From: Macrostomum lignano
Taxonomy: Eukaryota
Assembly: GCA_002269645.1 (NCBI GenBank)
Contig: NIVC01000140.1
Coordinates: 1 to 64,000, forward strand
Direction: 5' to 3'
DNA: 64,000 nt
A program made the translations under genes and the position numbers. Shown in pieces: positions 4,229 to 44,579 of the stretch. The notes beneath the pieces are model-generated. The model did not search any database. It was not told where the DNA came from and saw only the letters and a list, made by a program, of their open reading frames with translations. Position 1 is the first letter of the stretch, and each line of letters opens with the position of its first letter.

Positions 4229-15708
<11,480 letters not shown>

Positions 15709-19660: not shown

Positions 19661-21058
19661 GAATTTCTTCCACTTCGCCCCTTCGTGTTACAGTTCGCCC
19701 CTTCAGTTTTTGCTGCACTGTTTGTGAAACAGCCCTGAAAATCTGCAAGATGATGAACCTGTGTACGACACCAATAATATTAAAATTACGAGTCTTACTC
19801 GTAATCTTCACAGGAAAAGTAGGGATTACAGTTCAATACGCATTCCGCCAGCGATTGAGCATTCTGGTGTATTTTGTGGGCCATACCAGACTCATACTGT
19901 ACTAATAGTTCACCACGCCATTTTTTGCAGGACCCGAGGTCCTGAGGACAACAGCCCACAGAATATACAACAGCCCCGACCGCTTGCAGACTTCTTGACA
20001 AGCTATACCTATTCTCGAGAGGTGCTTGCTCGTACTTGAAAACAATCAGACGGATCATGCACCAAGGGGTTGCTTTGTTATACCGAAATTTCACATACAA
20101 GCCAATAAACCAACTTATTAAAACCAATACAAACCAGTTGAGATTCAAAAAGAAACAACACGCGAAATTGCAGCATGAATGCGAGTATTGAGTTTTGCAA
20201 GGTTTCAAACCAGAAGTAGTCGCGGTGGTAAAGACGAAATATTTTGATTACTTTTTGATGAAATCTTCAGTTACGAAATAAATTAACCGGTTTTTCATTT
20301 TATTAATTCAAAATGGGGCACCTACAAGCTAACAAATTGTTGCAAAATCCAAAATATTAAAAATTTATGGTCTTATAAAGACGCCTGATAATTTTTATAA
20401 AACAAATTTGAATTGGGAAGCCTTAAAAACTATCAACAGACTGGGAAAATCACGGAATAATGATGCTTGACCGAGCAAAAATTAATTTTGAGAAAATATC
20501 GGTTGGCTTATTGTACATATGCAACACTGACTATAGTCGATTCCATAGAATCGTCTCAGTAAGGATATCAATTGTGAGAAATTACAAATCATTAACTCCA
20601 TTAGTTTAGTTTCGATCCGTGGCTGATTCGAAATGAAGCATGCAACGATTATATGCGATAAAATAAACCATTTTACCTCCTACAGGTATTTTGAACAATC
20701 TTGTTCGAAAGAAGCAGGAGTTCAATTCAAACACTTTAGGAAACCTCTCTGCGCTTGCAGAAACTCAATTCAAAAGATGGGATTTTTGTACTGAAACATG
20801 CCTTTACCCGCACTAGGTACGAGTACTCTTATTTTTAAGAGTTCAAATTATAATATAAAGTCTCTCAGATTGTTCAGGAGCCCTGACGCCCTACTAGAGC
20901 GGCGCATCAAAAATTCAGCACCAGATCTGCGTCAGTGAAGAAAAGGCCTGAAAATTTCGAAACGTTTGCACCGTAATGTTTCTATTCACAAACCTTTGAA
21001 GAGCAAAAAATCAAGCTTACAATATCTTTCGCTAAAATACTGAGCGATTTAACATATC

Positions 21059-22398
21059 ATGCACACGCCATGCTCACACCATGCTCACACCATGCACACA
21101 CCATGCATACACCATGCACACACCATGCACACACCATGCATACCCTGCATACACCATGCATACACCATGCATACACCATGCACACACCATGCACACACCA
21201 TGCACACACCATGCATACCCTGCATACACCATGCATACCATGCACACACCATGCACACACCATGCGCACACCATGCATACACCATGCACACACCATGCAC
21301 ACACCATGCATACCATGCACACACCATGCATACCATGCATACCATGCACACACCATGCATACCATGCACACACCATGCATACACCATGCACACACCATGC
21401 ACACACCATGCATACCATGCACACACCATGCATACCATCCACACACCATGCACACACCATGCACACACCATGCACACACCATGCATACACCATGCACACA
21501 CCATGCACACACCATACATACACCCTGCATACACCATGCACACACCATGCATACCATGCATACACCATGCATACCATGCACACACCATGCACACACCATG
21601 CACACACCATGCATACACCATGCACACACCATGCACACACCATGCATACCATGCACACACCATGCATACCATGCATACCATGCACACACCATGCATACCA
21701 TGCACACACCATGCATACACCATGCACACACCATGCACACACCATGCATACCATGCACACACCATGCATACCATCCACACACCATGCACACACCATGCAC
21801 ACACCATGCACACACCATGCATACACCATGCACACACCATGCACACACCATGCACACACCATGCACACACCATGCACACACCATGCATACACCATGCATA
21901 CACCATGCATACACCATGCATACACCATGCACACACCATGCACACACCATGCACACACCATGCTCACACCATGCACACACCATGCATACACCATGCACAC
22001 ACCATGCACACACCATGCATACACCATGCACACACCATGCATACACCATGCATACCCTGCATACACCATGCACACACCATGCACACACCATGCACACACC
22101 ATGCACACACCATGCATACACCATGCATACACCATGCATACACCATGCACACACCATGCATACACCATGCACACACCATGCACACACCATGCACACACCA
22201 TGCACACACCATGCATACACCATGCATACCCTGCATACACCATGCACACACCATGCACACACCATGCATACACCATGCATACCCTGCATACACCATGCAT
22301 ACACCATGCATACCCTGCATACACCATGCACACACCCTGCACACACCATGCACACACCATGCACACACCATGCACACACCATGCACACACCATGCATA
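21059..22398. repeat. Short-unit satellite, mainly 9-bp catgcacac/catgcatac with 7- and 10-bp variants
   Basis: Direct reading. The long ORFs called here on both strands are artifacts of a stop-free unit. Confidence 0.97.
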
Positions 22399-22595
22399 CA
22401 GCATGTGCATCATTAAAAGTCGTGTGTCATCCAACCACAAGACCCAGGACACAAGAAGCAAGCGTGAAGAGTCAATCTGGTCAAGAGTCAAGGCACTCAG
22501 GGTGAAGCTAACAGTGGAGGCGTTGGGGGATTTGGACAAGCCGCGAAGTTTCGAGGTTCTGAATTCAAATTGCGGTCGTTCTGTCGTCCGAAATA

Positions 22596-23053: not shown

Positions 23054-26000
23054 AGAAAGGTCCTGATGACGGATAACACACAGATAATGAATCCCGCTGC
23101 AGCCCACTAGTACCAGCTGCTTACCTGCAATACAGGCGGTGATGAAGCAGGCGATGCTGCCTGCAACCAGGGCTCTCGGGCCGCAGTGGGCGATGTCGGC
23201 CCTGCGGCTGGGCGCCATGGCGGTCAGGGCGCCAATCAGGATGCCCATGCTGCCCAGGTTAGAGAAGCCGCACAGAGAGTAAGTGGCGATCACAAACGAT
23301 TTGTCCTGTGAATTTTAAAGCATAAATAAATATACTGCGCTAGTAGTACGCGAGGTAAAAGCAGAACTTCTGAACTTCAAAATGCTCCAAATTAGCTTGT
23401 GAGACAGTTAAGAGATCTGATTTCAAGATTGAATAAAAGTGAACTAAAAAGCGTTCAGTTTAGGAGAGATGTAGTGATACTTTGTCAGCCCAAAAAACAA
23501 TGGAAAAGTGAAAGCTTATGCGCAGTACTCGTATGACAGTTTATGATGGCAATCTCCTTATTCTCAGGACTTCAAAATGTCTATTAAGGTATCCGCTCAC
23601 CTCGAAAAGAACTCCGCCCGGCAGCGTAAGGTTCAGAGATGGAAACACTACATCTGTTCCACTCCAGCTGTGCTCCACCTCTGTCAGGTTCCCCATTGCT
23701 GCCGAAAGAGCATTGTAGTTCTTCTTGATGTCGCCTAAAAACATTGAGTCAAGCTCTGAAGTTCTGGGAAGAAATTAAAAACAAACCGCACAAACAGACC
23801 GCTCACCGAGCCGCTGGTAGGCGATGAACTCGTTTAGAAAAGTCTTGATGCCGATCAGCTCGGCCACCTGTCGGCAGTCTCTGGGAGGGACTCCCATGAC
23901 CAGCGCCAGCGGCCAGAACAAGAACGACAGCACGAACTCGAATGTGAGCGGGAAGCTCAGGCCCGCTCTGTAGCCGAGCCATGTAACCGTAGAATTGATG
24001 AAGGCCAGGATGCTGACAAACGCGATGAGGTTGGCTGCGATGGCGCCGATGACGGACAGCGAGGCGATGGCGCCTGCGCCAGCAGCCTCCACGATGCCGC
24101 GGTAGCGAGCGAGCTTGAGGCGCCTCACGTCCTCGACTCGAGTCCGCGATTTGCGAGTCTCCGGGTAGACCAGCTTACTGACTGCCAGGGCGGCGGGAGC
24201 GGACATGACACTGGCGCTGAGCAGGTGCCTGGCGGGCACCCCCATGCTGATGTACGCGGCCAGGACACCCCCAGCGATGGTGGCAAACCCTGAGGTCATC
24301 ACGCTGTGTATCTCGGACTTGGTCATGAGCGGTAGGAACGGCCGCACCATCAGTGGAGCCTCTGTCTGCGCAGCAAATGTTTTGTCACAAGATTATTGGA
24401 TTGTCACAAGATTATTGGATTGTCACAAGATTATTGGATTGTCACAAGATTATTGGATTGTCACTAGATTATTGGATTGTCACAAGATTATTGGATTGTC
24501 ACTAGATTATTGGATTGTCACAAGATTATTGGATTGTCACTAGATTATTGGATTGTCACAAGATTATTGGATTGTCACAAGATTATTGGATTGTCACAAG
24601 ATTATTGGATTGTCACTAGTGCTGTGTCTGGTAACTGATGTATTTGTCTTGTTGCAGATTATCTCTTATGGCTGATATTGCTTTTTATTTGTCATGCGAT
24701 TACGAAAGCTTTGGGCCGAAGAAAAACTTAGAGAGAAGACGCGCTCGGGGGGAGGCAATACGAGGGTTTCAAGGTCGTGGTCATAGACATAAGTGAATGG
24801 GGACTACTACAGTTAGCACGTAATAAAAAGGGGACGAAACTTGCAAAGTACGAGTATGGGCTACAATTATTACGTGCATTTGCCATGCACTTCAACTAGA
24901 TTATTGGATTGTCACAAGATTATTGGATTCTCACTAGATTATTGGATTGTCACTAGATTATTGGATTGTCACTAGATTATTGGATTGTCACTGGATTATT
25001 GGATTGTCACTAGATTATTGGATTGTCACTAGATTATTGGACTGTCACTGGATTATTGGATTGTCACTAGATTATTGGATTGTCACTGGATTATTGGATT
25101 GTCACTAGATTATTGGATTGTCACTGGATTATTGGATTGTCACTGGATTGTCACTAGATTATTGGATTGGCACTGGATTATTGGATTGTCACTGGATTGT
25201 CACTGGATTATTGGATTGTCACTAGATTATTGGATTGTCACTAGATTATTGGATTGTCACTAGATTATTGGATTGTCACTAGATTATTGGATTGTCACAA
25301 GATTATTGGATTGTCACTAGATTATTGGATTGTCACTGGATTATTGTCGTGTGATGCTTGCGCGAATTGCTCCATAGACATTTGAAGTTCTCTGCCCTAG
25401 AAATTATACCCTGGACCCAGCCTAAAGACAAATTCTGTATCTGCGGCCGCTGCGTCTCCATCATGTACTCATAGATGCAGCAGGCAATCAGCAGTCCTAA
25501 AACATGCCGGATTTCGTGGCTGTACTTACTGCACTGTGCAGCAGCTATTTTACAAACTGCTTGCTGCCAACTGTGGACTGAACGGCAGAACTGGGCTCAG
25601 AAGGTGCAAGTGTTGATGAAATACACTGCCTCATATACTAATTATAACGGGTGTCCCAAAAAAAGGGTAACACTTTGTGCGCTCACTGTGAGTGAGCAGT
25701 TACACCTATAGCACAGTAATTTAACAGGTCCACAGTAAACATTTGTAAGTTTTTCCCACAAACATTTGGTTGCGAAAAATTGCTCCAGAGGCGAGTTATT
25801 GAGCACTCGCTAGCTTTTCTGCCAAGCTTTGCCATACACAGCTGCCATAGACAATCTTTTGCTTTAAAAAATCTTAAGGAGCATAGACTCTGAGACGGTG
25901 TGTGGTCAAATACCAGTTTATTTGAAAAATCGTTATTGATTTTTTGAGCTTGTAAGTGTACGCTAGCTTCTCTGCTATGCTTTGCCATAGACGGAGGCCA

Positions 26001-27690
26001 TAGACAATCTTTTGCGTAAGAAAAATGACAGAGCATGCATAGACTCTGAGACTGATCTAACGTTAAAATTTCTTAAATTTCTTAAACGTTAAGATTGTCT
26101 ATGGCAGCTGTGTATGGCAAAGCTTGGCAGAAAAGCTAGCGTACACTTCTGTGCTCAATAACTCAAATGTTTGTGGGAAAAACTTACAAATGTTTACTGT
26201 GGACCTGTTAAATTACTGTGCTATAGGTCTAACTGCTCACTCACAGTGAGCGCACAAAGTGTTACCTTTTTTTGGGACACCCGTTATTTGCATATACTTG
26301 TACATGTGCGCCCCGAAATGCTAAACTGATATTCTGTCAAAGGAAAATAGATTCCTGCATTAGGCCATGGGAACTCACCTGCCCCACAAAAATGTTGGCA
26401 GAGGCCACCATACTCTCGGCAGCCGTGGTGCCCATCACCGTCTGCATGAAGGCTCCGATGCGGCAAATGACAGCTTGCAGAGCTCCGAGGTGAAACAGCA
26501 CAGTCAGCACGGAGGAGAAGAACACAATGATTGGCAGAATCTTGAGGTGGAAATAGTAAAAGCTGGGAGTAATGTGTGTTTGTGCATTAAAACCTGGCTT
26601 GCACCTTACGCACCTTGAATGCGAAGAAGTGATGCTCGTAGTCACCACCGAAAAGGAACTTTGAGCCTGCGGCGCAGTGCTCCAAAAACTCGGAAGTGCG
26701 GTCGCCCAGGAAGTTGAAGAACAAAAATCCTGCTCTGGTTCTAAGAATCAGTACCGCGAACACCAGCTGGATCAAAATCCCGCCCAGCACCGGCTTCCAG
26801 TTAACCTGTCACATTTTTGAAGCAGCTTCAATCTTCTGGTTCCAGTATAATTGAGACTAGAGGCAGTACGTTTGCGACTCAAAAAATTTAATACTTCTAT
26901 TTTCCTAATGCGCTAGTATCTATGTACATATATATATATTTATACTACTTTATAAAGGATAATAATATCTAATTACCCTTTCAGGGTGAGCCGAGACGGC
27001 GAGCGACAGCAGCAGAAGAAGCAGCAGACCACAAGCGGACGTGATATTGGCGGGATTCTGCACGGCCATCCACACGAGGAAGGAGGCGGCAATGAAGGCC
27101 TCCGGCACCCACCAGAAGGTGCTGGCCAGCTGGAAGAGGCGGTCGCAGCGGCTGCGCAGCTGCTTTAACTGGGCAGCCGCTCGCTCCAGTGAGGGCCTAC
27201 AGCACCGAGGAGCCCAGCTGACGACAGCCAGCAGGATGGCTAAGGCCGACACCCACAGCAGGCGGATGCTCTGCTCAGCCTCCGGGGTGCCACGGAATCT
27301 TGTGGCCAGCAGGAAGCTGCAGTAAGCCAAGTAGGCCAGGAAGGCGAGCGCCGCCGCTGCCGCCGTCAGCCACTTGGCGATGCCGACGAGCCGCTTGCGA
27401 CGAGCCGCGCCCTCGGCGGAGCAGAGCAGCCGGACGCACAGCCGGTGCCAGCAGTCGTCACGAGGAGGCAGCTCCTCGAAGTCCTCATGGGCATCCAGGT
27501 CTATTTCGGCTTGCTCATGTACTTTCTCAGTGACTTCATTTCCCCCTTTTGCACCCGTGGTTGCCTCTGCCGCCGGATCCTTCAGCACTGCAAGCTGCAG
27601 TTCAACAGTGTTGGCAGTTGCGCACGAAGCCGCATCAACAGGAATCGTTACGTTCTCAAACGCCTTCGAGTTCGCGATGTGTCCGGACAT
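22596..27690 (-). CDS. SLC28A: Concentrative nucleoside transporter (SLC28/CNT), paralog B, about 651 aa
   Basis: Exons 27690-26977, 26805-26614, 26540-26379, 24365-23807, 23734-23601 and 23305-23125. Internal exon sizes (192, 162, 559, 134, 181) equal those of paralog A. The terminal exon is inferred as ag|GTCTGCATTCGTGA (GLHS*), present in each 76-bp unit, so the exact end is uncertain. Confidence 0.9.
24382..25346. repeat. 19-bp minisatellite (gattattggattgtcacaa/cta/ctg) in CNT-B intron 3, split by an insertion
   Basis: Direct reading; interrupted at 24620-24894. Confidence 0.95.
24620..24894. mobile_element. Candidate solo LTR, 275 bp
   Basis: Begins TG and ends CA; flanked by the 5-bp direct repeat actag (24615-24619, 24895-24899); internal AATAAA on the + strand; the minisatellite register resumes after it. 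Confidence 0.65.
25647..26284. mobile_element. 638-bp non-autonomous TIR element (MITE), Tc1/mariner-like, in CNT-B intron 3
   Basis: Near-perfect TIR of over 120 bp starting acgggtgtcccaaaaaaa, continuing imperfectly to about 200 bp. TA on both flanks (25645-25646, 26285-26286). No coding capacity. Confidence 0.85.
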
Positions 27691-29645
27691 TGCCGCGTTA
27701 GAATATGGTATTCTGCCTGCGAATTATCAGCTGAATTTGTATTACCTGAGTGAATATGAATCTCACTCACGCTAACAGAAAATCATGGCACTAAACATAA
27801 AGAAAACCACGTGGCTTTTTCGAGCCTCTAATAAACCATTTCGGTTGATGGCGGAGCTGCTCTGAATATTTTTAATACTAAATCTATGAATCTACTTTAA
27901 GTGTACTGTAACTCTGAATCCAGTGCCGAGAGAGCTTGCTAGTAGAGGAAACTCGAAGATAAATGACTAGTAGTGAGCTGATACTCTCATTTTCTCGTAG
28001 CTATGAATCGCAGTTTGTTACAGTTCGGTCATGGAGGCATAAATAAGCACTAGAATTTCGCAGCAAGTGTGGCTGCTTGGGAGCCGAGCCTGACGCACTC
28101 TGCCGCATGCTGAATCAATTTTGCCGCTAAATTCAAGCCGCTGGGAAACTTTGCTATTCGAAATTCTCATTGAATTTCAATGAGAGCTGCAGCGCTAGTG
28201 ATTGCTGCCAGACCTCGCGGCCTGCGCCTAGCGCGAGTGCAAATAAATGCAAACAAGAAGTGGCATTGAGGCCTGTGAAGGCACTGATATTCAAGCATAG
28301 TCTACAGATATGCTTGTGTACACACTCAATTTCCTAACGGTTTTGCTGTATTTTTGCTTTACTATTAGTCACTGACTTGCAGCAACTACTACAGCCCACC
28401 ATCAACTCGGATGATCCCATCCTATTGCAGAGTAGCAAAAGCAGTGGGAGTCTGTCATGCAGCAGGGCCTAGCAGATACGCAGGGTTTGCGTTAAATCTT
28501 AGCGTGGTTTTGAGATCATGCTCACTTTACCTTACCCAGACACCCAAACAGGTGCAATACAAATCTTAAGGCTACTTTTTGCCAAATGTGAGTACGCAAG
28601 TCCAAGTGGGACTGTAATTGTAAAAATCAAGCCAAGATTTTCCTGTGGTGAGAAGACATGAAGATGCATGCAATGTCTCTTACCGTCTGGCTTCCAATTC
28701 CTCGCTCCAGTGGCTTGGTGGCAGCGCGGCCTCCGCTGCTGCCTTTTAGCTCTGCTGGCCGGGGAGGAAGGAGAGAGGAGGTGCGCCGGGAGACCAATGA
28801 AAATGATTCCAGCCAGCAGATATCGCGAGAAAGCTGCAAGGGGCTTCAGTTGCAATTGCAAACTAAGCTGCTTGCTGTGTGAACTCGCAGACCCGCTACA
28901 ACCACTGCTACATCAGCGAGCTCCTTAGTGATGCATCTTTCGAGTTCATGTCTGTGATTTTACCTCCTCCTTGTGTAAGTGTCTGTCTATCTGGGACTCG
29001 CTCTCCGCAGTCCTCTCTTGACACCGGTCTTTGTCGTGCTGTACGTGAAATACTGTACGGACAATGTACGCACAAGTAATGCACACAAGTCTGTCTGTCT
29101 GCACCCCGCACCCCAGCAAGCAGAGGCCTGTCAAGCGGGACTTTGTGTCCCGTCCCCGCTACGGGGAGCAGGGGAATAAATAAAACAGTCTGGAGGCACG
29201 GCCTCTGCAAGCGCTGCGAACTATAAGATCGAGCTGCTGCATGCCTGCGAGGCTCACACACATGCACACGAAAATTATCTTTAGTCATTTGGAACCAGAC
29301 TCCACACCTTGGAGTGCTGACGATTGCTGGGTCTTCATTCGAATTTTCTAATGTACCCTCGTAGTATCACACGTTTATTATACCACAATGCCTCCCTAAC
29401 CAGAGAAGCACTAAAAGATAGTGTTAGTTGGCAATCTTTGCTGTAGATATGTGGAGGCTGGAAGCCGTATAGGTTCGTGTATGAAGCTTCGTTATCGGGG
29501 TGACTGCCGGGACTCAGTATATGACTAACAAACCGATGGATGCAGGCACGCATGTACTAGATAGAGATTCGAATTCGACCTCGCCCCTATCGGACTAATA
29601 AAGTGAATAGAAAGCTTAATATCAACATTTGAATATGATTGCAAT

Positions 29646-29703
29646 TTCTAACAACTTCAACGCGTTTCGCACGCCATGGTGCATCGTCAGGATTTTATTA
29701 GAA
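29646..29703 (-). ncRNA. Type I hammerhead ribozyme motif (minus-strand copy)
   Basis: Exact reverse complement of the plus-strand motif at 29777-29834. Confidence 0.7.
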
Positions 29704-29776
29704 CGATTTGAGAAATTGAGATTGATAATTGATAATTGATTTAATCAATCGCTTTCAATCTCAATTTCTCAAATCG

Positions 29777-29834
29777 TTCTAATAAAATCCTGACGATGCA
29801 CCATGGCGTGCGAAACGCGTTGAAGTTGTTAGAA
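29777..29834 (+). ncRNA. Type I minimal hammerhead ribozyme motif
   Basis: CUGACGA (29790-29796), extra U, helix II GCAC/GUGC with a 6-nt loop, GAAA (29812-29815), palindromic ACGCGU as helix III, GUU cleavage triplet. Helix I (29777-29789 with 29822-29834) pairs at 11 of 13 positions, including one G-U. Confidence 0.72.
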
Positions 29835-30682
29835 ATTGCAATCATATTCAAATGTTGATATTAAGCTTTCTATTTATTCTTCTCGCCAAGCGAGCGACTC
29901 TACCAGCAATAAAGTGAATGTGTAGGCAAGAGTGACCGATTAGCCTTGAGATTGTTTCTATCGAAATTCATACGCAATGCGCAATTCTCCCTGTACGAAT
30001 TTCGCATTAAGAGTATTTCGATCTCGAATATTTAAAAACACCTTTCTGAATAAGCGAACTTAAAACCCCACGAGTCCGAAACGCAGGACGAAGACCCACG
30101 GACTCTGCTTGGATAGCAAGCTAATATTTGCTTGCAAGGCAGTGCCCCGCCAACTCAAGCAGTAAAGCAGCGGTGCGCGTGTACTCGAGTCACGTGTCGG
30201 AAATAACCATACAGCTTGCAGCCTGAAGTTCGAAGTTCAGTCTAAGCTCAGAGAACGCGTTCACATGCTGAACTTCAAAACTAAAGCTGGGGAATCAAGA
30301 TTTGGCAAGATTATACATGCATACTGCCTTCTTTATGTTTACATTTGGGTAATCAGACTGCTTTTGATCGCAACTCCTCTGTACCGGAATTACCTCCTTT
30401 AGTTTTGCAGTCTGGCGGCCACCCGCTTCGCGCCTAAGAGCTGGAAACCGGACGGGAGATAAGAATCAGCTCTGATTGATAGCTTTGTGTCTGCCTTTCC
30501 GGCGGTTGTTTACCGCGGCTGCTGTTGCCAGGTGACTCCCAGTTTTTGCTTATATCGGTAGATACTTTTTAAGCATATTAAATCCAGTTACTCGTAGTGT
30601 AAGCAAGACACCCAGTCAAATATCAGATCGCATTATACAAATTTGCATGTATAGAGAGAGGCTTTTGAAAACTTGCGATGGA

Positions 30683-31768
30683 CCAGCCAAGCGACTGCCA
30701 AATGACACAAATCAGGCAGACAACAGGCAATATCCCAACCTTGGCCCAGCCAAGCGACTGCCAAATGACACAAATCAGGCAGACAACAGGCAATATCCCA
30801 ACCTTGGCCAAGCAAAGTGACTGCCAAATGACACAAATCAGGCAGACAACAGGCAATATCCCAACCTTGGCCCAGCCAAGCGACTGCCAAATGACACAAA
30901 TCAGGCAGACAACAGGCAATATCCCAACCTTGGCCAAGCAAAGTGACTGCCAAATGACACAAATCAGGCAGACAACAGGCAATATCCCAACCTTGGCCAA
31001 GCAAAGTGACTGCCAAATGACACAAATCAGGCAGACAACAGGCAATATCCCAACCTTGGCCAAGCAAAGTGACTGCCAAATGACACAAATCAGGCAGACA
31101 ACAGGCAATATCCCAACCTTGGCCCAGCCAAGCGACTGCCAAATGACACAAATCAGGCAGACAACAGGCAATATCCCAACCTTGGCCCAGCCAAGCGACT
31201 GCCAAATGACACAAATCAGGCAGACAACAGGCAATATCCCAACCTTGGCCCAGCCAAGCGACTGCCAAATGACACAAATCAGGCAGACAACAGGCAATAT
31301 CCCAACCTTGGCCCAGCCAAGCGACTGCCAAATGACACAAATCAGGCAGACAACAGGCAATATCCCAACCTTGGCCCAGCCAAGCGACTGCCAAATGACA
31401 CAAATCAGGCAGACAACAGGCAATATCCCAACCTTGGCCCAGCCAAGCGACTGCCAAATGACACAAATCAGGCAGACAACAGGCAATATCCCAACCTTGG
31501 CCCAGCCAAGCGACTGCCAAACGACACAAATCAGGCAGACAACAGGCAATATCCCAACCTTGGCCCAGCCAAGCGACTGCCAAATGACACAAATCAGGCA
31601 GACAACAGGCAATATCCCAACCTTGGCCAAGCAAAGTGACTGCCAAATGACACAAATCAGGCAGACAACAGGCAATATCCCAACCTTGGCCAAGCAAAGT
31701 GACTGCCAAATGACACAAATCAGGCAGACAACAGGCAATATCCCAACCTTGGCCCAGCCAAGCGACTG
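30683..31768. repeat. 63-bp minisatellite, about 17 copies, two interspersed unit variants
   Basis: Variants differ at cccagccaagcg vs caagcaaagtg; the three long ORFs here are repeat artifacts. Confidence 0.97.
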
Positions 31769-33344
31769 CTGACACAAATCAGGTAGACAATAGGCAATGC
31801 CCTAACATTGACCAAGCAACGCGTTTGCTTGCATCGTCAACGACACCAGCAGCAGCCAGCTCTGCATGGGTTGAGCTGTCCAACAGCCAGTTCAGTTCAG
31901 GGGCTGCTCACGGTGCAGACAGACACCGCGAACCCAGACCGGCCCAGGTGCTGATGAACGCTTTGCAACGGCAGTGCTGAGGAGTATTTCTTTTCACATA
32001 GTACACAGCAGTCAAGCATTGCATTAAAGCCTGTCAAAGTTGCCCACCTGATACACAAAAGCCACAAGACCAGTCACAACTGGCTCCGACATATTAAAAT
32101 TCCCCGACCGCAAATGTTGACTGAGTTGACGCAGTAGCCCAGCCTTAGCCATGCAATGAAGTTCTATCTGCTCTGCTGTGTCTCAGGATTCTGACCTTCC
32201 ATCCATCCTCGATAACAGTGCGAACTGCACCAGATCTGCGACCGCGGTAATAAAGTCTGAAATCTTCGTCTCAAGGACACCTCCGTTGCCACTGGTGCCA
32301 CCTCTCCTGCACGGACACTTGAAATGTTGAAAATTAGAAAATAGCAGGTAAAATAATGAGCAAAGGACAAACATTACATTATCAAGAGCAGCTTGAATCA
32401 GATAGTTTAACCATGTCACTGGATTATTCAAACTTGTATGCAGTTTTAATATTATAAGAAACAGGTAAAGCCAGTTAGCATGCTGTCAGTAAATATAGTA
32501 AAGATAAGTACAAAAAGCGAACAGTAAAAGACTTCAGCAGCGAATAACAGAGGGAGATTCGCTACTAACAATTTCAGGTCGTAACGGAAAAAGGAACAAA
32601 AAGCATCGCCAAGTCTGCACTATGGAAGTGGTTCGCAAGGAGCCAAGCCAGAGCTACTCGCTGCCTGGGAACTGCAGCTGATCAGCTCAAATACTCGGCA
32701 AACATCAGCAGCAGGGCGCATCCGGGCAGGTGGTGAAGAATCCATTGAGACACGCGTCAATCTGTTGCACATCTATTTGCACATCTGTCATCCAACAGAA
32801 TCGCCAGGTGTCCAAGCAGATAGCGATTTGAACTCATGATGCAAACCTGCTGTTGGTGCGCACCACAGAAACATGCAGAAATAAAAGCAAATTATAAAAA
32901 AACTGATATTCGAAAACACAGGTGAGATTAGTACTCATTAATTATTCATTTGATAGCAGCAAAAAACTGCTTTTAAACTCGAGGGATTGCTGGCGAGCAG
33001 CTCGCGAAGCATGCGCACTTCACAACACTGAAAATAATGCGGACTTGTCCTAAGCAGAGCTTGTGACAACAAAAACAAAGGACGTAGGCCCATAGGGCAC
33101 AATAATACGAATTCGACGGCCCAGCAAAGCGGCTATAAAAATCAGTGTGCAAGTTGGCTGGTGCTTGCAGCAAAGCATTAAGCTCGCGACAGCAGACTAA
33201 TTATTGAATTAAAAACGGCATAAAGATGACTAGAAAAGTGCGCGATAAAATGGTTGAGACTAGATGAACGGTGCACAAGAGCAGGGGCATGGAGGACTGA
33301 GGCTAACAGGCTTGAAGCTTGAATAGATGGAGCAGATGAAGTAG

Positions 33345-33949: not shown

Positions 33950-36900
33950 TTTGGCGACGGCCGGCCCTGCGGTGCATCGGCGGTGCGCCGCTTCCGTCGG
34001 ATGCCGTCGTCGATAAGCAGCGCGCCGCGGCTGAAGTCAGACATGATGTCGTCCAGGGCGCCGTCCTCAATGGTGCGGGTGTGCTTGCGGGCCTTCCGCC
34101 GGCCCGCCTCCTCCTGCTGCTTGCGCTGAAATTGCAGAGGTGACAAAAGCGAGTGAAGAACCAACCCATGTCTCGGAACTTGAACCCGTCGAGGACTCGG
34201 GTGGCTTCACATTTAGCGTGTATTTAGGTTACTTTTTCACCGCCTTGAGAGTCTCAAAGGCCCATCGACTACTGATGAGACAGAAATCAATATAAAATTC
34301 AAGCAGCTGCAAGTGCTGTGTAAAAACATTTCTAGGCGGAAAACCCTTGGTAAAAATGGCATTCACACTGCTAAGGCTTAGATCATCAAGCCAATAAAAT
34401 ATGCGAGATGGCAGGTCTGCGATTGAAGAATCTGGGCAGACTAGCCCGAGAATGAAGCCAGGAACTCAATCCCAAATTGGAAGCTTACTGAATGCGCAGC
34501 CACCCGCGGATAGACATGCGCTTTTAGAAGTAAATAAATCACGGCAATTATTTGCAGCTGAAAAAAGCAATTTGCGAACCAAGCCGGTGATTCAGCAGCC
34601 CAGCTGACTGACAGCTAAGCAGTCCGCCAGCAGCGCCGCAACTGAAGTGTCGCAAAGTTTAGGCAGAAGCCCCGCCGCGATCCGCTCGTCAGCTGCTTTT
34701 CTGCCTACGCAGTTTTGGAATTTCCTACAGTGCTTCTCTGGATCTGGATTACCAGCCATCCGACCTGCACATGCTGCGCTTCTCGACCTTCTCCTTCAAT
34801 GCATCTTAGCGAGAAACAACTGTTTCTAAACTCTTGAGCTGCACAACGCCTCATCAGCCTCCTGGTCTTCTATGCTTTATGAAGACATGCCTTATTCCCT
34901 GCTGATGCCATAGAGACTGCCTCATTCCCTGCTGTTTCCATGGAGACTGCCTCATTCCCTGCTGTTTCCATGGAGACTGCCTCATTCCCTGCCGATCCCA
35001 TGGAGACTGCCTCATTCCCTGCCGATCCCATGGAGACTGACTCATTCCCTGTTGATGCCATAGAGACTGCCTCATTCCCTGCTGTTTCCATGGAGACTGC
35101 CTCATTCCCTGCTGTTTTCATGGAGACTGCTTCATTCCCTGCTGTTTCCATGGAGACTGCCTCATTCCCTGCCGATCCCATGGAGACTGCCTCATTCCCT
35201 GCCGATCCCATGGAGACTGACTCATTCCCTGTTGATGCCATAGAGACTGCCTCATTCCCTGCTGTTTCCATGGAGACTGCCTCATTCCCTGCTGTTTCCA
35301 TGGAGACTGCCTCATTCCCTGCCGATCCCATGGAGACTGCCTCATTCCCTGCTGATCCCATGGAGACTGCCTCATTCCCTGCCGATCCCATGGAGACTGC
35401 CTCATTCCCTGCCGATCCCATGGAGACTGCCTCATTCCCTGCTGATCCCATGGAGACTGCCTCATTCCCTGCCGATCCCATGGAGACTGCCTCATTCCCT
35501 GCTGTTTCCATGGAGACTGCCTCATTCCCTGCCGATCCCATGGAGACTGCCTCATTCCCTGTCGATCCCATGGAGACTGACTCATTCCCTGTTGATGCCA
35601 TAGAGACTGCCTCATTCCCTGCTGTTTTCATGGAGACTGCCTCATTCCCTGCTGTTTTCATGGAGACTGCCTCATTCCCTGCTGTTTCCATGGAGACTGC
35701 CTCATTCCCTGCCGATCCCATGGAGACTGCCTCATTCCCTGCTGATCCCATAGAGACTGCCTCATTCCCTGCCGATCCCATGGAGACTGACTCATTCCCT
35801 GCTGATCCCATAGAGACTGACTTATTCCCTGCTGATGCCATGGAGACTGCCTCATTCCCTGCCGATCCCATAGAGACTGACTCATTCCCTGTTGATGCCA
35901 TAGAGACTGCCTCATTCCCTGCTGTTTTCATGGAGACTGACTCATTCCCTGCTGCTTCCATGGAGACTGCCTCATTCCCTGCCGATCCCATGGAGACTGC
36001 CTCATTCCCTGCCGATCCCATGGAGACTGCCTCATTCCCTGCCGATCCCATGGAGACTGACTCATTCCCTGCTGATCCCATAGAGACTGACTCATTCCCT
36101 GCTGATGCCATAGAGACTGCCTCATTCCCTGCCGATCCCATGGAGACTGCCTCATTCCCTGCCGATCCCATGGAGACTGACTCATTCCCTGCTGATCCCA
36201 TAGAGACTGACTCATTCCCTGCTGATGCCATAGAGACTGCCTCATTCCCTGCCGATCCCATGGAGACTGCCTCATTCCCTGCCGATCCCATGGAGACTGC
36301 CTCATTCCCTGTTGATGCCATAGAGACTGCCTCATTCCCTGCCGATCCCATGGAGACTGCCTCATTCCCTGCTGTTTCCATGGAGACTGCCTCATTCCCT
36401 GCCGATCCCATGGAGACTGCCTCATTCCCTGTTGATGCCATAGAGACTGCCTCATTCCCTGCCGATCCCATGGAGACTGCCTCATTCCCTGCTGTTTCCA
36501 TGGAGACTGCCTCACTCCCTGCTGATCCCATGGAGACTGACTCATTCCCTGCCGATCCCATGGAGACTGCCTCATTCCCTGCTGATCCCATGGAGACTGC
36601 CTCATTCCCTGCCGATCCCATGAGTCACAGCCAGATGCGCGACTTACCTTGGAGCTCTGCTGCCGCTCATCGCCGCCCTCCCGCTGAGCCGCAATGAGCC
36701 GGCGCTGCTCATTCTCGGTGCGGGCGCGCCGCACATCCACCTGAAAGCGGTGCAGCACGCCAAAGAAGGCGTCAGAAGTTACCAGCTGAGTGCCCTCGCC
36801 GAAGCGGGATTTGGCCAGGTTGAAGCACTCCTCCGCAGTGCGCAAGTCAGTCTTTATCCGCTCCGCCTTGTCTTTATGCGCTTCGTAGAACTCGCGCAGT

Positions 36901-39900
36901 CGAGCGTTGTCGGGCAGATCTGAGCTGAGAGAGCGGATGAGCTCCATGCCCGCCAGCAGCTGAACAACGTCCGCCTTAACATTGTCCAAGTTCACGGCAG
37001 CGGCCTTCTCCACGTACCTGCATATAGCAAAGAGAAAGCTGCTGGGTCAGCACAGGTGTTTAATAGCTAGCTATTCAAAGGTACAGGCTACTTAAGAGCT
37101 CCTCCTATAAGAGCTCACCTACGAAACGTTAACTTCTTTTCTAGACTTTTTCAAAAGAAGATAAAATGCTGGGAATGTCTAAATTGAATAGCCGGTGTTT
37201 AAACAGCAGCTTCACAGCTGCTGATGAAAAGTTACCTATCGAGCAAAATTCTTACTAACAATAAACTAAATTTGAACGTACGACTCGTATGTTCCACCAA
37301 AAGTTGAAAGCCGCTCTAGTCGCAGTTTAAAGGTAGGAAATGCAGACTAAAACCTAAATTATGCCTTTAGCAAGCGGCTTATAAAGTTCAAACAGCGCAC
37401 CTGAGGTCAGACTCAAAGGTGGCCACATCTGGGAACTGCTGGTCGATAAGGTCAACCAGGTAGTGCAGCAGCGTCCACTTCTTGTCCCCGGACTTGGTGT
37501 CGGGCAGCATGGACAGACTGGACAGTCGGAATCCATAGGCCACGCCCCGCTTGTGGCTGTTCAGGTAGTTGCCCAGCGTGAGCAGCAGCTCCAGCAGCCG
37601 CTTGAACTTGGCGGACTTCTCCAGGTTCATAGAGGCCGTAATGACGTAACGAAGCGGCGACTCCACGCCGTGCAGCACCTCTTCGAACTGCCCCATGTAA
37701 CGGAGAGCCTGCAGGCGGCGCTCCAGGCCTTCGACGCGGCAGAGGCGGATCAGCAGCTGGTCCAGCTCGTGCAGCTCGCTCACGCTCCGACCTTCAACGA
37801 ACTCGTACTGCCTGTAGGCCTGCAAAATCAACGGTGTATAACAGTGGTCAAAAAGTCAACATAAGTAGTGACCTACGACTATGTTGAGTAAACCTTTACT
37901 TGGCTTCTGCGCGCCAGACGAATTATAGACAAAATTACGAGCGACAATTCGGCTTTGCACTGGACTCACCTGCAGCTCCTCGGCAGTTGGCACGCCCTGC
38001 CTAAGCAGAATCTCGGCCAGCTCAGTGGGCACCGCGGCCGGATCCAAACTGTCCAAAGCGGCAACGAGGCGGTCGGGACTGAGACGAAGAGCATCGAGCT
38101 TGTGGCGCAGGATGGCGACGCTGCGCAGGCGGTCGTGGCTGAGGAGGGTCGGCTTGTCCTTCCGCATGCGGGCCAGTGGGTCGTCCGTGGAGTCTCCGTC
38201 GCCCCCGGTAGAGGCTGCAGAAGTGGCGGCAGCGGCGGCCAGCTTAAACTTTTCCTCGAAGTCGTCGCAGTCGAGGCCCTGGCGGACCCGGTCAGGCTGC
38301 ATGTCCATAAAGATGGTGCCGCGGCACTGGTTAGGGGGCAGCACCGTCCAGTTGAACAGGGGCAGGCGGTGTTTCGGAATCACCGCGTCCTTCAGGTTCA
38401 GCCCAGCTGGACCTCCCAGCGACACTGGTGGCGGTGGCGGCGGTGGGGGAGGAGGCACCCCAGCTGGCGGCGGGGGAGGCGGCGGAGGGGGCGGAGCCGG
38501 CGCTGGGACGGCGGGTGCAGCTGGTTGCGGGACAGGCAGTGATGGCACTGATGCAGCAGCAGCAGCAGCGGCAGTCGAGGCGTCTTTGGCAGCTTGCAGC
38601 TCCTCCTTTGTGCGGACGAGCTCGGCCTCCGAGTCACGCAGGCGGCGGCTCATCTCGTCCAGCAGGCGGTCCACCTCCGACTCGCGATCCGAAGCAGTCT
38701 GGCTGGCCTGCCGCAGGCTGTGCCGCATGCGGGCGAGAGCAGCATCCTTCTCCTGGCGCAGGCTGGAGCACTCGGCTTCGGAACGCTGCAGGCGCTGGCC
38801 CAGCTCGGCCATGCGGGCCACAGACTCGTCCTCCAAACGCCGGAGTCTGGCCTGCACAGAGTACAGCTCGTCCTCCAGACTCACCGCCCGGGACACCGCG
38901 GCCTGCTTGGCTAGAGAGTCGTGATACAGGCTCACAATGTCTATGGTGTTGTCAGCAATGGCCTCGAGCTGACTGTTGAGCCGGCAGTCTTCGTATTTGC
39001 CCTGCAGGCTGTGCAAAAAATCCTCCAGGCCCAGCTGGGCAAACTCAGCTTGGAGGAAGACCCGCAGACCCAGCTGCTCATTGTTGATGTTCTGTACAAC
39101 ATTGACGAACCTGGCACAGCTGATCATGAACTCAATGCTGTACTGCTCAGGCGGCAGACTGTCGTGATGCCTGAAGTAGGCCATGAGGGTCTCCCACCGC
39201 CTGGCCTCCCCGATCCGCTCCTTCAGGCAGTCGAAGGCCTCCAGCACCCTGGCGTGCATGCCATCAAGCATACAGAGCGCAGCCAGCAGCTCCAGCGCGA
39301 AAGTTTTGGTGCTATACCTGGGGTGCAGCAGACACTGAACGATGATGCTCACGGCGGCGCTGTCCTGGAAGGTCCGCTCGCAGGCGCGCTGGTTGTTGAA
39401 GAAGACCCGCATGCACTTGATGCCGTTGTGCAGGTCGCCCAGCAGAGCCTCGTCGCCTTCTCCTGCCCTGGACGGCGGCTGCCGCTGCCGCTTAGCCGAC
39501 CTCTTTGCGCTGCCGCCACCGGCCACCGGAGTGCCGGTGTTGCTGCTGGCGGTGGGACGGCGGCCCGACAAACTGCCGTTTGCCTGCTCCTCGGCGCTGC
39601 GTGGCCGGAATAATAATGAGCTCATCGGAATGTTGATAGCAATACTTGCCCAGCTACAGCTAATGCAGATCCAATGGGCAATCAACGTAAACGAGCTAAT
39701 TCAATTACTTCAATGCTAAGACCTCCAGCTCACCTTATGAGATCATCAAGCGTTTTGCCAAGGTACTCGATCAGCAGCTCCAGGCCTCCTTCTTCCAGGA
39801 ATTCTTCAAGCCATCTACGGTGAAAATGGAAAGGCTCGGACTAACGCTAAATTTATCATTTGCAGCCGGTTTAGCTTCAGCGTACTGACTGCACTTTATG

Positions 39901-42167: not shown

Positions 42168-42351
42168 AAGGGAAAAGAGCAACTACCTACTCACCCTCCT
42201 GATTATACCATTAAATAAGCTAAGGCTAAGAGATTTTAGACTTACCATGCGCACAACTTTAAGGGAAAAGAGCAACTACCTACTCACCCTCCTGATTATA
42301 CCATTAAATAAGCTAAGGCTAAGAGATTTTAGACTTACCATGGGCACAACC
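42168..42351. repeat. 93-bp tandem duplication (2 copies)
   Basis: aagggaaaagagcaactacc...cttaccatg begins at 42168 and 42261. Confidence 0.9.
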
Positions 42352-44539: not shown

Positions 44540-44579
44540 GACATGTTTCGCCTCGCGTCTGGCATCGTCAGGTTCTTAA
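44540..44579 (-). ncRNA. Hammerhead ribozyme core (minus-strand copy, family 2)
   Basis: Reverse complement reads ttaagaac CUGACGA U GCC agacgcga GGC GAAA CAUG UC, identical to the plus copy. Helix I is non-canonical. Confidence 0.55.

What the first reader, a model, noticed from the sequence alone, without database searches (positions are those of the whole stretch)
29597..29919. About 300-bp mobile palindrome carrying a hammerhead ribozyme on each strand
Seen: perfectly inverted arms, each with a complete type I hammerhead (CUGACGA, extra U, 4-bp helix II, GAAA, palindromic ACGCGU helix III, GUU site, 11/13-paired helix I), a 33-nt tail and a 12-bp flanking direct repeat. Established: minimal type I hammerheads with a short palindromic helix III, proposed to cleave as dimers, occur in the terminal repeats of Penelope-like elements, which also form inverted ends and short 3' tails. 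Inference: this is a tiny protein-free Penelope-dependent retroelement. Either strand's transcript contains one active-sense ribozyme inside a hairpin of about 120 bp, so folding would compete between dsRNA and ribozyme. If the 12-mer is terminal redundancy rather than a TSD, the unit would be a closed rod with ribozymes in both polarities, reminiscent of retrozyme or viroid-like circles.
Basis: partly seen in the sequence, partly recalled or inferred. Interest (0 to 1): 0.85.

Follow-up and report, generated by a model that had tools for sequence, protein, structure and literature searches.

The report
Inverted Penelope repeat pair with hammerheads
This 300-bp palindrome in a Macrostomum-like flatworm genome is a recent, protein-free insertion made by a Penelope-like retrotransposon: two copies of its hammerhead-bearing terminal repeat joined head to head, which is an already described and ordinary arrangement.

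Summary
There are 120-nt perfect inverted arms, a complete type I hammerhead motif on each strand, a 33-nt one-sided tail and a perfect 12-nt flanking direct repeat.

The layout is TSD, inverted pseudo-LTR, pseudo-LTR, about 30-nt tail at one end, TSD. That is the published signature of Penelope-like element (PLE) insertions (PMC3846280, PMC8557442, PMC11167929). Opposite-strand hammerhead pairs 100-700 bp apart were already noted in Schistosoma (PMC4209133).

I found 27 analogous hammerhead palindromes in metagenome contigs. Fifteen of them have flanking repeats of 9-16 nt, each with a different sequence, and each of those has exactly one 18-39 nt tail. So the 12-mer is best read as a target-site duplication, not as the terminal redundancy of a circle.

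Each strand carries only one sense ribozyme, so no unit can be excised. In a read-through transcript the hairpin is about 93 kcal/mol more stable than the ribozyme fold.

I could not decide whether the source RNA came from an autonomous PLE or from an ORF-less lineage, because the element is single-copy in the window and the host genome could not be searched.

Verdict: a new member of a known kind, of low interest.

The parts
29597..29608 (.). Left copy of the 12-nt direct repeat AATAAAGTGAAT, read as a target-site duplication. Its last 3 nt (AAT) overlap the start of the left arm.
   Evidence: D2, 100%; by analogy with 15 metagenomic palindromes flanked by 9-16 nt repeats of differing sequence
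29606..29742 (-). Left pseudo-LTR-like unit, sense on the minus strand. The perfect part is 29606-29725. It ends at the outer side without a tail.
29659..29690 (-). Hammerhead core on the minus strand, the mirror of the plus-strand motif. The helix I strands lie at 29691-29703 and 29646-29658. The predicted cut is between 29659 and 29658.
   Evidence: custom model R1: 35.9 bits, E 2.6e-9
29726..29754 (.). Head-to-head junction. It holds an inner 7-bp palindrome ATTGATT/AATCAAT around a 1-nt apex (29742), plus a 9-nt versus 5-nt non-matching patch.
   Evidence: palindromic junctions at inverted pLTRs are described in PMC3846280
29743..29874 (+). Right pseudo-LTR-like unit, sense on the plus strand. 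The perfect part is 29755-29874.
29777..29834 (+). Type I hammerhead motif. Helix I 5' strand 29777-29789; CUGACGA 29790-29796; extra U 29797; helix II GCAC/GUGC with loop CAUGGC 29798-29811; GAAA 29812-29815; CGCG 29816-29819; U16.1 29820; U17 29821 (cut after it); helix I 3' strand 29822-29834.
   Evidence: no Rfam hammerhead hit, but Rfam also misses every covarying member of this class
29875..29907 (+). 33-nt 'tail' present only at the 3' end of the plus-sense unit. It contains a small stem-loop CUCGC-CAA-GCGAG followed by a run rich in A and C.
   Evidence: A one-sided tail of 18-39 nt occurs in all 16 TSD-bearing palindromes. The tail is described as the stretch between two reverse-transcription start sites in PMC11167929.
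29908..29919 (.). Right copy of the 12-nt direct repeat (TSD).

Best explanation
The feature is a single, young insertion made by the reverse transcriptase/endonuclease of a Penelope-like element (PLE). It consists of two copies of the element's pseudo-LTR (pLTR), the roughly 135-nt region that carries the hammerhead, joined head to head with no ORF between them.

**How it was made (inferred from the junctions and from PAc biochemistry)**
1. The target ...ACT|AATAAAGTGAAT|GTG... was nicked on both strands, 12 nt apart.
2. The bottom-strand 3' end (...TTTATT-3') primed reverse transcription at the distal internal start site of the template RNA. This gave the plus-sense unit with its 33-nt tail.
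3. The other arm has no tail. It was made either by priming from the top-strand 3' end (...GTGAAT-3', with 3 nt of overlap with the arm) at the proximal start site, or by snap-back of the first cDNA at the pLTR head.
4. The two arms were sealed at a short palindromic microhomology.
5. Gap repair duplicated the 12-mer.

**What it does now**
- The hammerhead is cargo of the pLTR and is not needed for the insertion step.
- At this locus it is not expected to work. There is only one sense copy per strand. Its helix III needs a second ribozyme. Any read-through transcript folds into a 120-bp hairpin.
- The locus is therefore most likely an inert retrotransposition product. At most it would be a source of hairpin dsRNA.

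**What is shown and what is not**
- Shown: the anatomy, the motif, the thermodynamics, and the behaviour of analogous insertions.
- Inferred: the priming scheme, and that the machinery was a PLE of this genome.
For: **Anatomy in the window**
- Arms, TSD, tail and motif are as described.

**Literature**
- The typical Penelope insertion has an inverted pLTR next to the direct pLTR, an 8-10 bp TSD and a 31-bp tail at the 3' end of one inverted pLTR. It has palindromes at the inverted junction, and head-to-head is the most frequent arrangement. pLTRs alone suffice in cis (PMC3846280).
- A 30-40 bp tail is often found at one end only, and the hammerhead lies in the pLTR (PMC8557442).
- The PAc protein cleaves and extends both strands. 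It starts reverse transcription at two internal sites, and the tail is the stretch between them. It prefers ATT targets, and hammerhead mutants still insert (PMC11167929).
- Opposite-strand hammerhead pairs 100-700 bp apart were seen in Schistosoma and attributed to truncated PLEs. [quoted passage not shown]

- A relaxed motif scan returned 120 metagenome loci.
- They contain 31 distinct hammerheads of the same class. Helix I and II pair types vary widely: covariation score 0.725 against 0.195 in shuffles. This set was filtered for pairing.
- Adjacent hammerhead pairs closer than 400 nt are 29 (-,+) against 7 (+,-), 4 (++) and 6 (--). Of the 29, 28 lie in palindromes with arms of 75-220 nt.
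- 15 of 27 metagenomic palindromes have flanking repeats of 9-16 nt, all of different sequence. The control rate is 1-3%. Every one has exactly one side extended by 18-39 nt.
- The distance from the cleavage site to the short end is 57-90 nt and to the long end 84-121 nt. In the window these are 50 and 86 nt. In PAc, my arithmetic on figures quoted (start site 111-118 nt into the ORF, cut 26 nt after the start codon) puts the start site about 85-92 nt past the cut.
- The tail of L063 is homologous to sequence in other copies of its family, so it is templated by the element.
- Most independent copies that are 75-85% identical share the apex position to within 15 nt; comparisons involving L074, which carries a tandem duplication, differ by 42-49 nt. 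Arms within a copy (88-98% in the L063 family) are more alike than arms of different copies. So the palindrome is made anew at each insertion from a unit with a defined head.
- A model built from the 31 independent hammerheads hits only the two window sites strongly (35.9 bits, E 2.6e-9).
- The hairpin is -219.3 kcal/mol against -126.3 with the hammerhead fold enforced.
Against: - No RT/GIY-YIG ORF is linked to this arm. The element is single-copy in the 64 kb, and no relative was found in the metagenome, prokaryotic-genome or viral collections. Mobility and PLE dependence of this particular sequence therefore rest on analogy.
- No empty site was examined.
- The analogues come from unidentified metagenome contigs, probably from a few eukaryotic hosts. 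Some may be the same locus sampled twice.
- Model R1 is partly circular, because its training set was retrieved with a pattern that fixes the core and helix III of the window motif.
- The frame opened by the AUG embedded in the hammerhead (A9-U-G10.1) closes after 20 codons. That does not fit the PAc layout, where the ORF starts at that position.
- A perfect short palindrome could in principle be an assembly or amplification artefact.
Confidence: 0.8

Rival explanations
1. This is a dedicated, protein-free non-autonomous family. A short RNA consisting of one pLTR-like unit has its own evolutionary lineage, borrows PLE proteins in trans, and is deposited as inverted dimers. The insertion mechanism is the same as in the best explanation. 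Only the source of the template RNA differs.
For: - None of the 27 metagenomic palindromes lies next to a long ORF.
- Their inner ends are defined rather than random.
- The frame opened by the hammerhead-embedded AUG closes after 20 codons in the window.
- pLTRs alone suffice in cis (PMC3846280).
- Animal retrozymes are argued to be non-autonomous derivatives of pLTRs (bioRxiv 10.64898/2026.07.22.740005).
- Only a few hammerheads per genome map within full PLEs (PMC4209133).
Against: - The same product is expected if the reverse transcriptase starts at the 5'-proximal pLTR-ORF junction of an ordinary PLE mRNA. I infer this from the internal initiation reported in PMC11167929.
- An ATG at 29852 opens a frame that stays open to the end of the tail. 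This resembles pLTRs that include the first codons of the PLE ORF (12 aa, or 22 aa with the tail, in PMC3846280).
- No copies of this family are available for testing.
Confidence: 0.35
2. This is a viroid-like or retrozyme-like unit. The 12-mer would be terminal redundancy of a circular rod-shaped RNA with ribozymes of both polarities, captured in DNA.
For: - A hammerhead motif is present in both polarities, and a rod-like fold is predicted.
Against: - Each transcript polarity holds only one sense ribozyme, so a unit cannot be released by two cuts.
- There is no head-to-tail repeat at the locus.
- The 33-nt tail breaks the symmetry.
- Analogous palindromes have flanking repeats of differing sequence and length.
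- Arms in analogues are remade at each insertion.
- Animal retrozymes are described as tandem repeats (PMC7229834).
Confidence: 0.03
3. This is a foldback or MITE-type DNA transposon with 120-bp terminal inverted repeats that happens to contain a hammerhead-like sequence.
For: - Long perfect inverted repeats, no ORF, and a flanking direct repeat.
Against: - The right arm is separated from the repeat by 33 nt, while the left arm abuts it.
- From my own knowledge, a 12-bp TSD lies outside the fixed lengths of the known cut-and-paste superfamilies.
- In analogues the TSD length varies from 9 to 16 nt within one architecture. That is typical of staggered nicking by retroelement endonucleases, not of a transposase.
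- Arms within a copy are more similar than arms of different copies.
Confidence: 0.05
4. This is a hairpin-RNA or miRNA-like gene, or else an assembly or amplification artefact that produced a local inverted duplication.
For: - Sub-threshold Rfam hits to plant and animal miRNA precursor models, for example MIR1509 at 49.8 bits against a cutoff of 87.
- Perfect arms.
Against: - All miRNA hits are far below their gathering scores and are of the kind any long AT-rich hairpin gives.
- An artefact would not produce a TSD plus a one-sided tail with the spacing seen in 15 independent analogues.
Confidence: 0.03

Closest known systems
Penelope-like element insertions with an inverted pLTR, tail and TSD (e.g. 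Pen2a_Av of Adineta vaga, PMC3846280; general scheme in PMC8557442)
   Same: - Head-to-head inverted pLTRs with a small palindrome at the junction.
- A short TSD: 8-10 bp there, 12 bp here.
- A roughly 31-bp tail at the 3' end of one inverted pLTR only: 33 nt here.
- The hammerhead lies in the pLTR.
   Different: - Here there is nothing between or after the two pLTRs: no ORF and no third pLTR.
- The arms are shorter, about 135 nt against 180-220 bp.
- The parent element is unknown.
PLE-type hammerheads of metazoans, which work as dimers, including 'dual HHRs on opposite strands' in Schistosoma mansoni (PMC4209133)
   Same: - Type I topology.
- An extra nucleotide between A9 and G10.1.
- A G10.1-C11.1 pair.
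- Palindromic positions around helix III (ACGCGU).
- Occurrence as opposite-strand pairs 100-700 bp apart in a flatworm.
   Different: - Helix II is 4 bp and helix I is long with an internal loop. This is closer to the paper's 'canonical' metazoan type than to its min-HHRs, which have a 7-8 bp helix II.
- Activity is untested.
Poseidon PAc of Anolis carolinensis (PMC11167929)
   Same: - Two reverse-transcription start sites a tail-length apart, downstream of the hammerhead.
- By my arithmetic on the paper's figures, the distal site is about 85-92 nt past the ribozyme cut in PAc. The tail end here is 86 nt past the predicted cut.
- AT-rich target, with a primer ending in ATT.
- Both DNA strands are used as primers.
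   Different: - In PAc the ORF starts at the AUG at the base of stem II. Here that frame closes after 20 codons.
- There is no protein or biochemistry for the flatworm element.
Animal non-LTR retrozymes (PMC7229834; bioRxiv 10.64898/2026.07.22.740005)
   Same: - Small, AT-rich, ORF-less sequences with type I hammerheads, related to PLE pLTRs and thought to use PLE machinery.
   Different: - Retrozymes are head-to-tail tandem repeats that release circular RNAs.
- This locus is a head-to-head pair with one sense ribozyme per strand, and it cannot release a unit.

Membership tests
Hammerhead ribozyme, type I (PLE-type, dimer-dependent) | Conserved core: C3 U4 G5 A6 N7 G8 A9, G12 A13 A14, the A15.1-U16.1 pair, and H17 at the cleavage site | tested here: met
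   CUGACGA ... GAAA ... U-U at 29790-29821 on the plus strand and mirrored on the minus strand
Hammerhead ribozyme, type I (PLE-type, dimer-dependent) | Helix II closed by G10.1-C11.1. Helix I formed by the 5' and 3' flanks, leaving an open end (type I). | tested here: met
   Helix II is GCAC/GUGC with a 6-nt loop. Helix I pairs at 11 of 13 positions (2 bp, a 2x2 loop, 9 bp).
Hammerhead ribozyme, type I (PLE-type, dimer-dependent) | [quoted passage not shown] | tested here: met
   Extra U at 29797 and ACGCGU at 29815-29820. The same traits occur in 31 independent covarying members.
Hammerhead ribozyme, type I (PLE-type, dimer-dependent) | Match to a hammerhead covariance model | tested here: inconclusive
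   There is no Rfam hammerhead hit at gathering score or at E<=10. Rfam also misses every member of this class in 15 loci. Custom model R1 gives 35.9 bits, E 2.6e-9, but its training set was retrieved with a pattern derived from this motif.
Hammerhead ribozyme, type I (PLE-type, dimer-dependent) | Compensatory changes in helices I and II among copies of the same family | not testable with these tools
   The two arms are identical and no other copy could be retrieved. Covariation is shown only at class level.
Hammerhead ribozyme, type I (PLE-type, dimer-dependent) | Self-cleavage | not testable with these tools
   This needs in vitro transcription. The monomer hammerhead fold is -9.7 kcal/mol against an MFE of -14.5, and the full-length hairpin excludes it by about 93 kcal/mol.
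Penelope-like element insertion (pLTR architecture) | Head-to-head inverted pLTRs with a palindromic junction | tested here: met
   definition in PMC3846280
Penelope-like element insertion (pLTR architecture) | A 30-40 bp tail at one end only | tested here: met
   33 nt at 29875-29907 and none on the left. All 16 TSD-bearing palindromes have one tail.
Penelope-like element insertion (pLTR architecture) | A short target-site duplication created on insertion | tested here: inconclusive
   A perfect 12-nt repeat is present. Analogues show variable 9-16 nt repeats. No empty site for this locus could be examined.
Penelope-like element insertion (pLTR architecture) | An ORF with telomerase-like RT plus GIY-YIG endonuclease (autonomous element) | tested here: not met
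   There is no ORF above 39 aa in the element. No other copy of the arm lies next to any ORF in the window. Among the ORFs I scanned (20 of 193 of at least 80 aa), the only RT belongs to a LINE with an AP-type endonuclease and RNase H. I therefore file it as a PLE-made pLTR pair, not as a PLE.
Penelope-like element insertion (pLTR architecture) | Repeated in the host genome, with a matching autonomous partner | not testable with these tools
   No Macrostomum genomic DNA could be retrieved; its proteins appear only as UniRef entries.
Animal non-LTR retrozyme | Head-to-tail tandem copies, each with a type I hammerhead, allowing excision of a unit RNA | tested here: not met
   There is no tandem array at 29.5-30.0 kb. 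The two units are inverted.
MITE / foldback DNA transposon | Terminal inverted repeats abutting the TSD on both sides | tested here: not met
   The right arm ends 33 nt before the repeat.
miRNA precursor families (Rfam MIR1509, MIR774, MIR4372 and others) | A score at or above the family gathering threshold | tested here: not met
   The best hit is 49.8 bits against a threshold of 87.

The most novel reading that the evidence does not exclude
ORF-less head-to-head pLTR pairs may not be mere by-products. They could be the propagating form of a minimal PLE parasite. In this reading each arm is transcribed outward as a one-unit RNA. Two such RNAs pair through the palindromic hammerhead helix III (ACGCGU) inside a dimeric RT/EN particle. 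The two strands of the target are then primed at the two different start sites. This would explain why every TSD-bearing palindrome has exactly one tail, and why inverted pairs outnumber the other orientations. The ribozyme's palindrome would then serve mainly as an RNA dimerisation signal for retrotransposition rather than for cleavage.
Probability: 0.1. Interest if true: 0.55.

Novelty: new member of a known kind. Interest (0 to 1): 0.2.

Why it matters
- It records a very young Penelope-type insertion, with 0 differences in 120-nt arms and a perfect TSD, in a Macrostomum-like flatworm. This implies recent PLE activity in a genus used as a regeneration and transgenesis model.
- It adds one more hammerhead to the large PLE-associated class.
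- It shows that such palindromes give sub-threshold matches to miRNA precursor models, and one analogue reaches a family threshold exactly. Annotators should expect this.
- It does not open a new kind of element or ribozyme biology.

Tried and rejected
- **Rfam.** I ran it at gathering score on the whole window, and at E<=10 on 501 nt and on 86 nt. There was no hammerhead family hit, only sub-threshold miRNA-like hits caused by the hairpin. A control showed that Rfam also misses 15 loci full of covarying hammerheads of this class. The negative result is therefore uninformative.
- **Family-specific pattern scans.** The pattern CTGANGANGCAC-N4-8-GTGCGAAACGCGT gave 0 hits in metagenome, prokaryotic-genome and viral contigs.
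- **Reaching host genomic DNA.** An exact-product look-up of a window LINE ORF was not on record. Macrostomum lignano proteins exist only as UniRef entries without contigs. One JGI contig (L001) carries an 81%-identical LINE protein but no hammerhead.
- **Literature.** I found nothing on hammerheads or PLEs specifically in Macrostomum.
- **Confirming L077 as a PLE.** The ORF next to telomeric repeats and a hammerhead gave only a sub-threshold RVT_1 match (22.5 bits against a cutoff of 29.6). It matched nothing in PDB sequences or NCBIfam.
- **Third hit of model R1.** The hit at 55366-55402(-) lacks GAAA and helix III, and I judged it to be chance.
- **The 14-nt repeat ATCGGACTAATAAA / ATCGTTCTAATAAA.** By my own estimate this is about what chance gives in 900 nt, so I set it aside.
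- **Last protein-homology search.** I ran no further search on a 19-aa peptide or on L077, because the expected yield was too low for its cost.
Full report
**1. What is in the sequence**

Between 29597 and 29919 the window contains two 120-nt arms, 29606-29725 and 29755-29874. They are 100% complementary and 29 nt apart. The 29-nt centre is not unique sequence. It holds a 7-bp inner palindrome (ATTGATT/AATCAAT) around a single apex base at 29742. Between that palindrome and the perfect arms lies a patch of 9 nt on the left against 5 nt on the right that does not match. blastn aligns 29606-29874 to its own reverse complement at 95% over 273 columns.

A perfect 12-mer, AATAAAGTGAAT, lies at 29597-29608, overlapping the left arm by 3 nt. 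It recurs at 29908-29919. Thirty-three nucleotides (29875-29907) separate the right arm from the right 12-mer. Nothing separates the left arm from the left 12-mer.

Each arm carries CUGACGA-U-GCAC(CAUGGC)GUGC-GAAA-CGCG-U-U, at 29790-29821 (+) and 29690-29659 (-). This has every conserved hammerhead core position, a G10.1-C11.1 pair, an extra U after A9, and the palindrome ACGCGU where helix III would be. Helix I pairs at 11 of 13 positions.

My descriptor, written after seeing this motif, finds only these two sites in the window and none in 200 dinucleotide shuffles. The element has no ORF above 39 aa and occurs once in the 64 kb.

**2. Host and surroundings**

- A 609-aa formin exon at 37856-39685(-) is 84% identical to Macrostomum lignano proteins.
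- A LINE fragment also has its closest named relatives in M. lignano.
- The window is therefore from a Macrostomum-like flatworm.
- It is repeat-rich, with about 20 minisatellite arrays.
- It holds a decayed LINE with an AP-type endonuclease, RT and RNase H at about 10.7-14.6 kb.
- It has two concentrative nucleoside transporter paralogues on the minus strand.
- The palindrome lies about 2 kb upstream of the nearer paralogue.

**3. Covariance models**

Rfam reports no hammerhead family at gathering score, and none at E<=10 even on an 86-nt slice. The only hits are sub-threshold miRNA precursor models that respond to the long hairpin.

This negative result turned out to be uninformative. Rfam also finds no hammerhead in 15 metagenome loci that contain many hammerheads of the same class with covarying helices.

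I built a model (R1) from 31 such independent sequences. It hits the two window sites at 35.9 bits, E 2.6e-9. The next hit scores 16.7 bits and lacks half the motif.

R1 is partly circular, because its training sequences were retrieved with a pattern that fixes the core and helix III of the window motif. What it adds is that helices I and II and the extra U fit the class.

**4. Related sequences**

A pattern specific to this family found nothing in metagenome, prokaryotic-genome or viral contigs. I could reach no Macrostomum genomic DNA.

Most are 38-42% GC with no long ORFs. I take them to be eukaryotic host DNA of unidentified origin.

Thirty-one distinct sequences have a helix II of at least 4 bp and a helix I of at least 3 bp, where about 0.3 would be expected by chance. 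Their helices show many pair types: covariation score 0.725 against 0.195 in shuffles, and 0.09-0.16 when the partners are slid. Most carry the extra U.

**5. The palindrome is a recurrent architecture**

- In those loci, adjacent hammerhead cores closer than 400 nt are oriented (-,+) 29 times, against 7 (+,-), 4 (++) and 6 (--). Of the 29, 28 lie in palindromes with arms of 75-220 nt at 80-98% identity. Several have apex loops of 0-3 nt.
- Of 27 such palindromes, 15 have flanking direct repeats of 9-16 nt, each with a different sequence. The rate is 1-3% in a positional control.
- In all 15, as in the window, one arm abuts the repeat (-5 to +8 nt) and the other is separated from it by 18-39 nt, mostly 27-38.
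- The tail lies on the left in 7 of the 16 cases and on the right in 9.
- The distance from the predicted cleavage site to the short end is 57-90 nt and to the long end 84-121 nt. The window gives 50 and 86 nt.
- In the L063 family the tail is homologous to sequence in other copies, so it is templated by the element and not by the target.
- Independent copies that are only 75-85% identical mostly have their apex at the same homologous position, within 15 nt. The exceptions involve L074, which carries a tandem duplication.
- The two arms of one copy are more alike than arms of different copies. L063's arms are 98% identical, against 94% to L017 and 78-82% to L110.
- The palindromes are therefore made anew at each insertion, from a unit that has a defined inner end. 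They are neither random truncations nor copies of a palindromic master.

**6. What the literature already says**

- **Arkhipova et al. [quoted passage not shown] It has palindromes at the inverted junction, and head-to-head is the most frequent arrangement. pLTRs alone suffice in cis.
- **Craig et al. 2021 (PMC8557442).** They repeat this scheme and place the hammerhead in the pLTR.
- **Frangieh et al. 2024 (PMC11167929).** A purified PLE protein cleaves and extends both DNA strands and starts reverse transcription at two internal RNA sites, with the tail between them. It prefers ATT targets and does not need an active hammerhead to insert.
- **Cervera and de la Pena 2014 (PMC4209133).** They describe the extra nucleotide, the G10.1-C11.1 pair and the palindromic helix III region. 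They also report low, dimer-dependent activity in vitro, and, in Schistosoma, dual hammerheads 100-700 bp apart on opposite strands, attributed to truncated PLEs.

The window feature matches all of this. It differs only in being the minimal case: two pLTR-like units and nothing else.

**7. Mechanism**

Reading the junctions, the plus strand runs from ...GTGAAT straight into the antisense unit. The minus strand runs from ...TTTATT into the complement of the tail.

The simplest scheme is that both target strands were nicked 12 nt apart. The bottom-strand end then primed at the distal start site, giving the unit with the tail. The tail-less arm arose from top-strand priming at the proximal site, or from snap-back at the pLTR head. 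The two arms were sealed at the 7-bp palindromic microhomology, and repair duplicated the 12-mer. This scheme is inferred. Only the anatomy, and its agreement with PAc biochemistry and with the 15 analogues, are shown.

The ribozyme is unlikely to act at this locus, for four reasons:
- One strand's transcript has one sense copy, so no unit can be excised.
- Helix III needs a partner.
- The monomer hammerhead fold (-9.7 kcal/mol) is not the minimum free energy fold (-14.5).
- In the 323-nt transcript the hairpin (-219.3) beats the hammerhead-enforced fold (-126.3) by about 93 kcal/mol.

**8. What remains open**

I could not decide whether the template RNA came from an autonomous PLE or from an ORF-less lineage.

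An autonomous source would work if reverse transcription started at the 5'-proximal pLTR-ORF junction and ran to the 5' end of the mRNA.

For an ORF-less lineage:
- None of the analogous palindromes lies next to an ORF.
- The frame opened by the AUG formed by A9-U-G10.1 closes after 20 codons.

Against it:
- An ATG at 29852 opens a frame that stays open exactly to the end of the tail. This resembles rotifer pLTRs, which contain the first 12 codons of the ORF, or 22 with the tail.

A genome-wide search with one arm would settle this.

**9. Rivals**

- **Viroid-like or retrozyme circle.** Disfavoured by the one-sided tail, the single sense ribozyme per strand, the absence of tandem copies, and the TSD-like behaviour of the flanking repeats in analogues.
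- **MITE or foldback DNA transposon.** Disfavoured by the asymmetric ends and by the variable repeat length.
- **miRNA-like gene.** Not supported, because all hits are far below threshold.
- **Assembly artefact.** It would not reproduce the TSD-plus-tail geometry.

**10. Verdict**

It is wrong about the circle, and unproven about a separate tiny element.

The feature is a new instance of a known kind: a solo head-to-head pLTR pair of a Penelope-like element. Interest is low. Its main value is as evidence of recent PLE activity in this flatworm, and as a warning that such palindromes resemble miRNA precursors to covariance models.

Noticed in passing
metagenome loci L005-L113 (e.g. L063:5822-6228, L039:4402-4791, L090:3678-4162): In all 16 TSD-bearing hammerhead palindromes (15 metagenomic plus the window), exactly one end carries the 18-39 nt tail, never both and never neither. 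The tail is on the left in 7 and on the right in 9. This strict one-tail rule suggests the two arms are made by two different initiation events or steps.
   Followed up: partly
metagenome loci L002-L121 (688,735 nt): Adjacent hammerhead cores are strongly biased to the head-to-head (-,+) orientation, 29 against 7, 4 and 6. The inner ends of the arms fall at the same homologous position in most diverged copies. None of the 27 palindromes is next to a long ORF.
   Followed up: partly
L077:1-3743 (minus strand): A 647-aa ORF with a sub-threshold RVT_1 match is followed by CCCTAAA-type reverse-complement telomeric repeats (about 320-345). Then comes a hammerhead of the same class (233-202). This is the layout published for endonuclease-deficient, telomere-associated PLEs. 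I could not confirm the RT identity.
   Followed up: partly
window 29795-29797 and alignment A1 /: The 'extra' nucleotide after A9 is U in 39 of 47 class members, so A9-U-G10.1 spells AUG. In Anolis PAc the ORF starts at that place (PMC11167929). In the window this frame stops after 20 codons, while an ATG at 29852 stays open to the end of the tail.
   Followed up: partly
L063:6000-6082: The apex of a hammerhead palindrome scores exactly at the Rfam gathering threshold for mir-25 (40.5 bits). PLE palindromes can be mis-annotated as miRNA precursors.
   Followed up: no
window 10725-14574 (+): A decayed LINE with several frame breaks: AP-type endonuclease (10770-11495), RVT_1 (12581-13231) and RNase H (13423-14577). 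An 81%-identical protein lies on a 2.7-kb contig of JGI metagenome 3300038379 (L001). Flatworm DNA of this group is therefore present in that sample.
   Followed up: partly
window 6529-7098 (-), 23775-24350 (-), 26340-26747 (-): There are two paralogous exons of a Na+-dependent (concentrative) nucleoside transporter about 17 kb apart on the same strand, plus a 'Gate' domain exon. This looks like a tandem gene duplication.
   Followed up: no
window 37856-39685 (-): A long single exon of a formin (GBD-FH3-FH2), 84% identical to two Macrostomum lignano proteins. It is the basis for assigning the host.
   Followed up: no
window 21058-22405, 30679-31798, 34879-36622, 55533-56426, 59456-61148 and others: Minisatellite arrays are unusually dense. 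Periods are 11, 63, 30, 20 and 29 nt (the last with a 404-nt higher-order unit), with up to 126 copies. They create long spurious ORFs on both strands.
   Followed up: no
window 41000-48000: An AT-rich block of 33-41% GC sits between regions of 52-61% GC. It contains no ORF of at least 150 aa. Its nature was not examined.
   Followed up: no
window 55366-55402 (-): A weak hit of the custom hammerhead model (16.7 bits, E 0.006). It has CCUGAUGAU and a 5-bp helix I complement but no GAAA or helix III. It is probably chance, or possibly a relic.
   Followed up: partly
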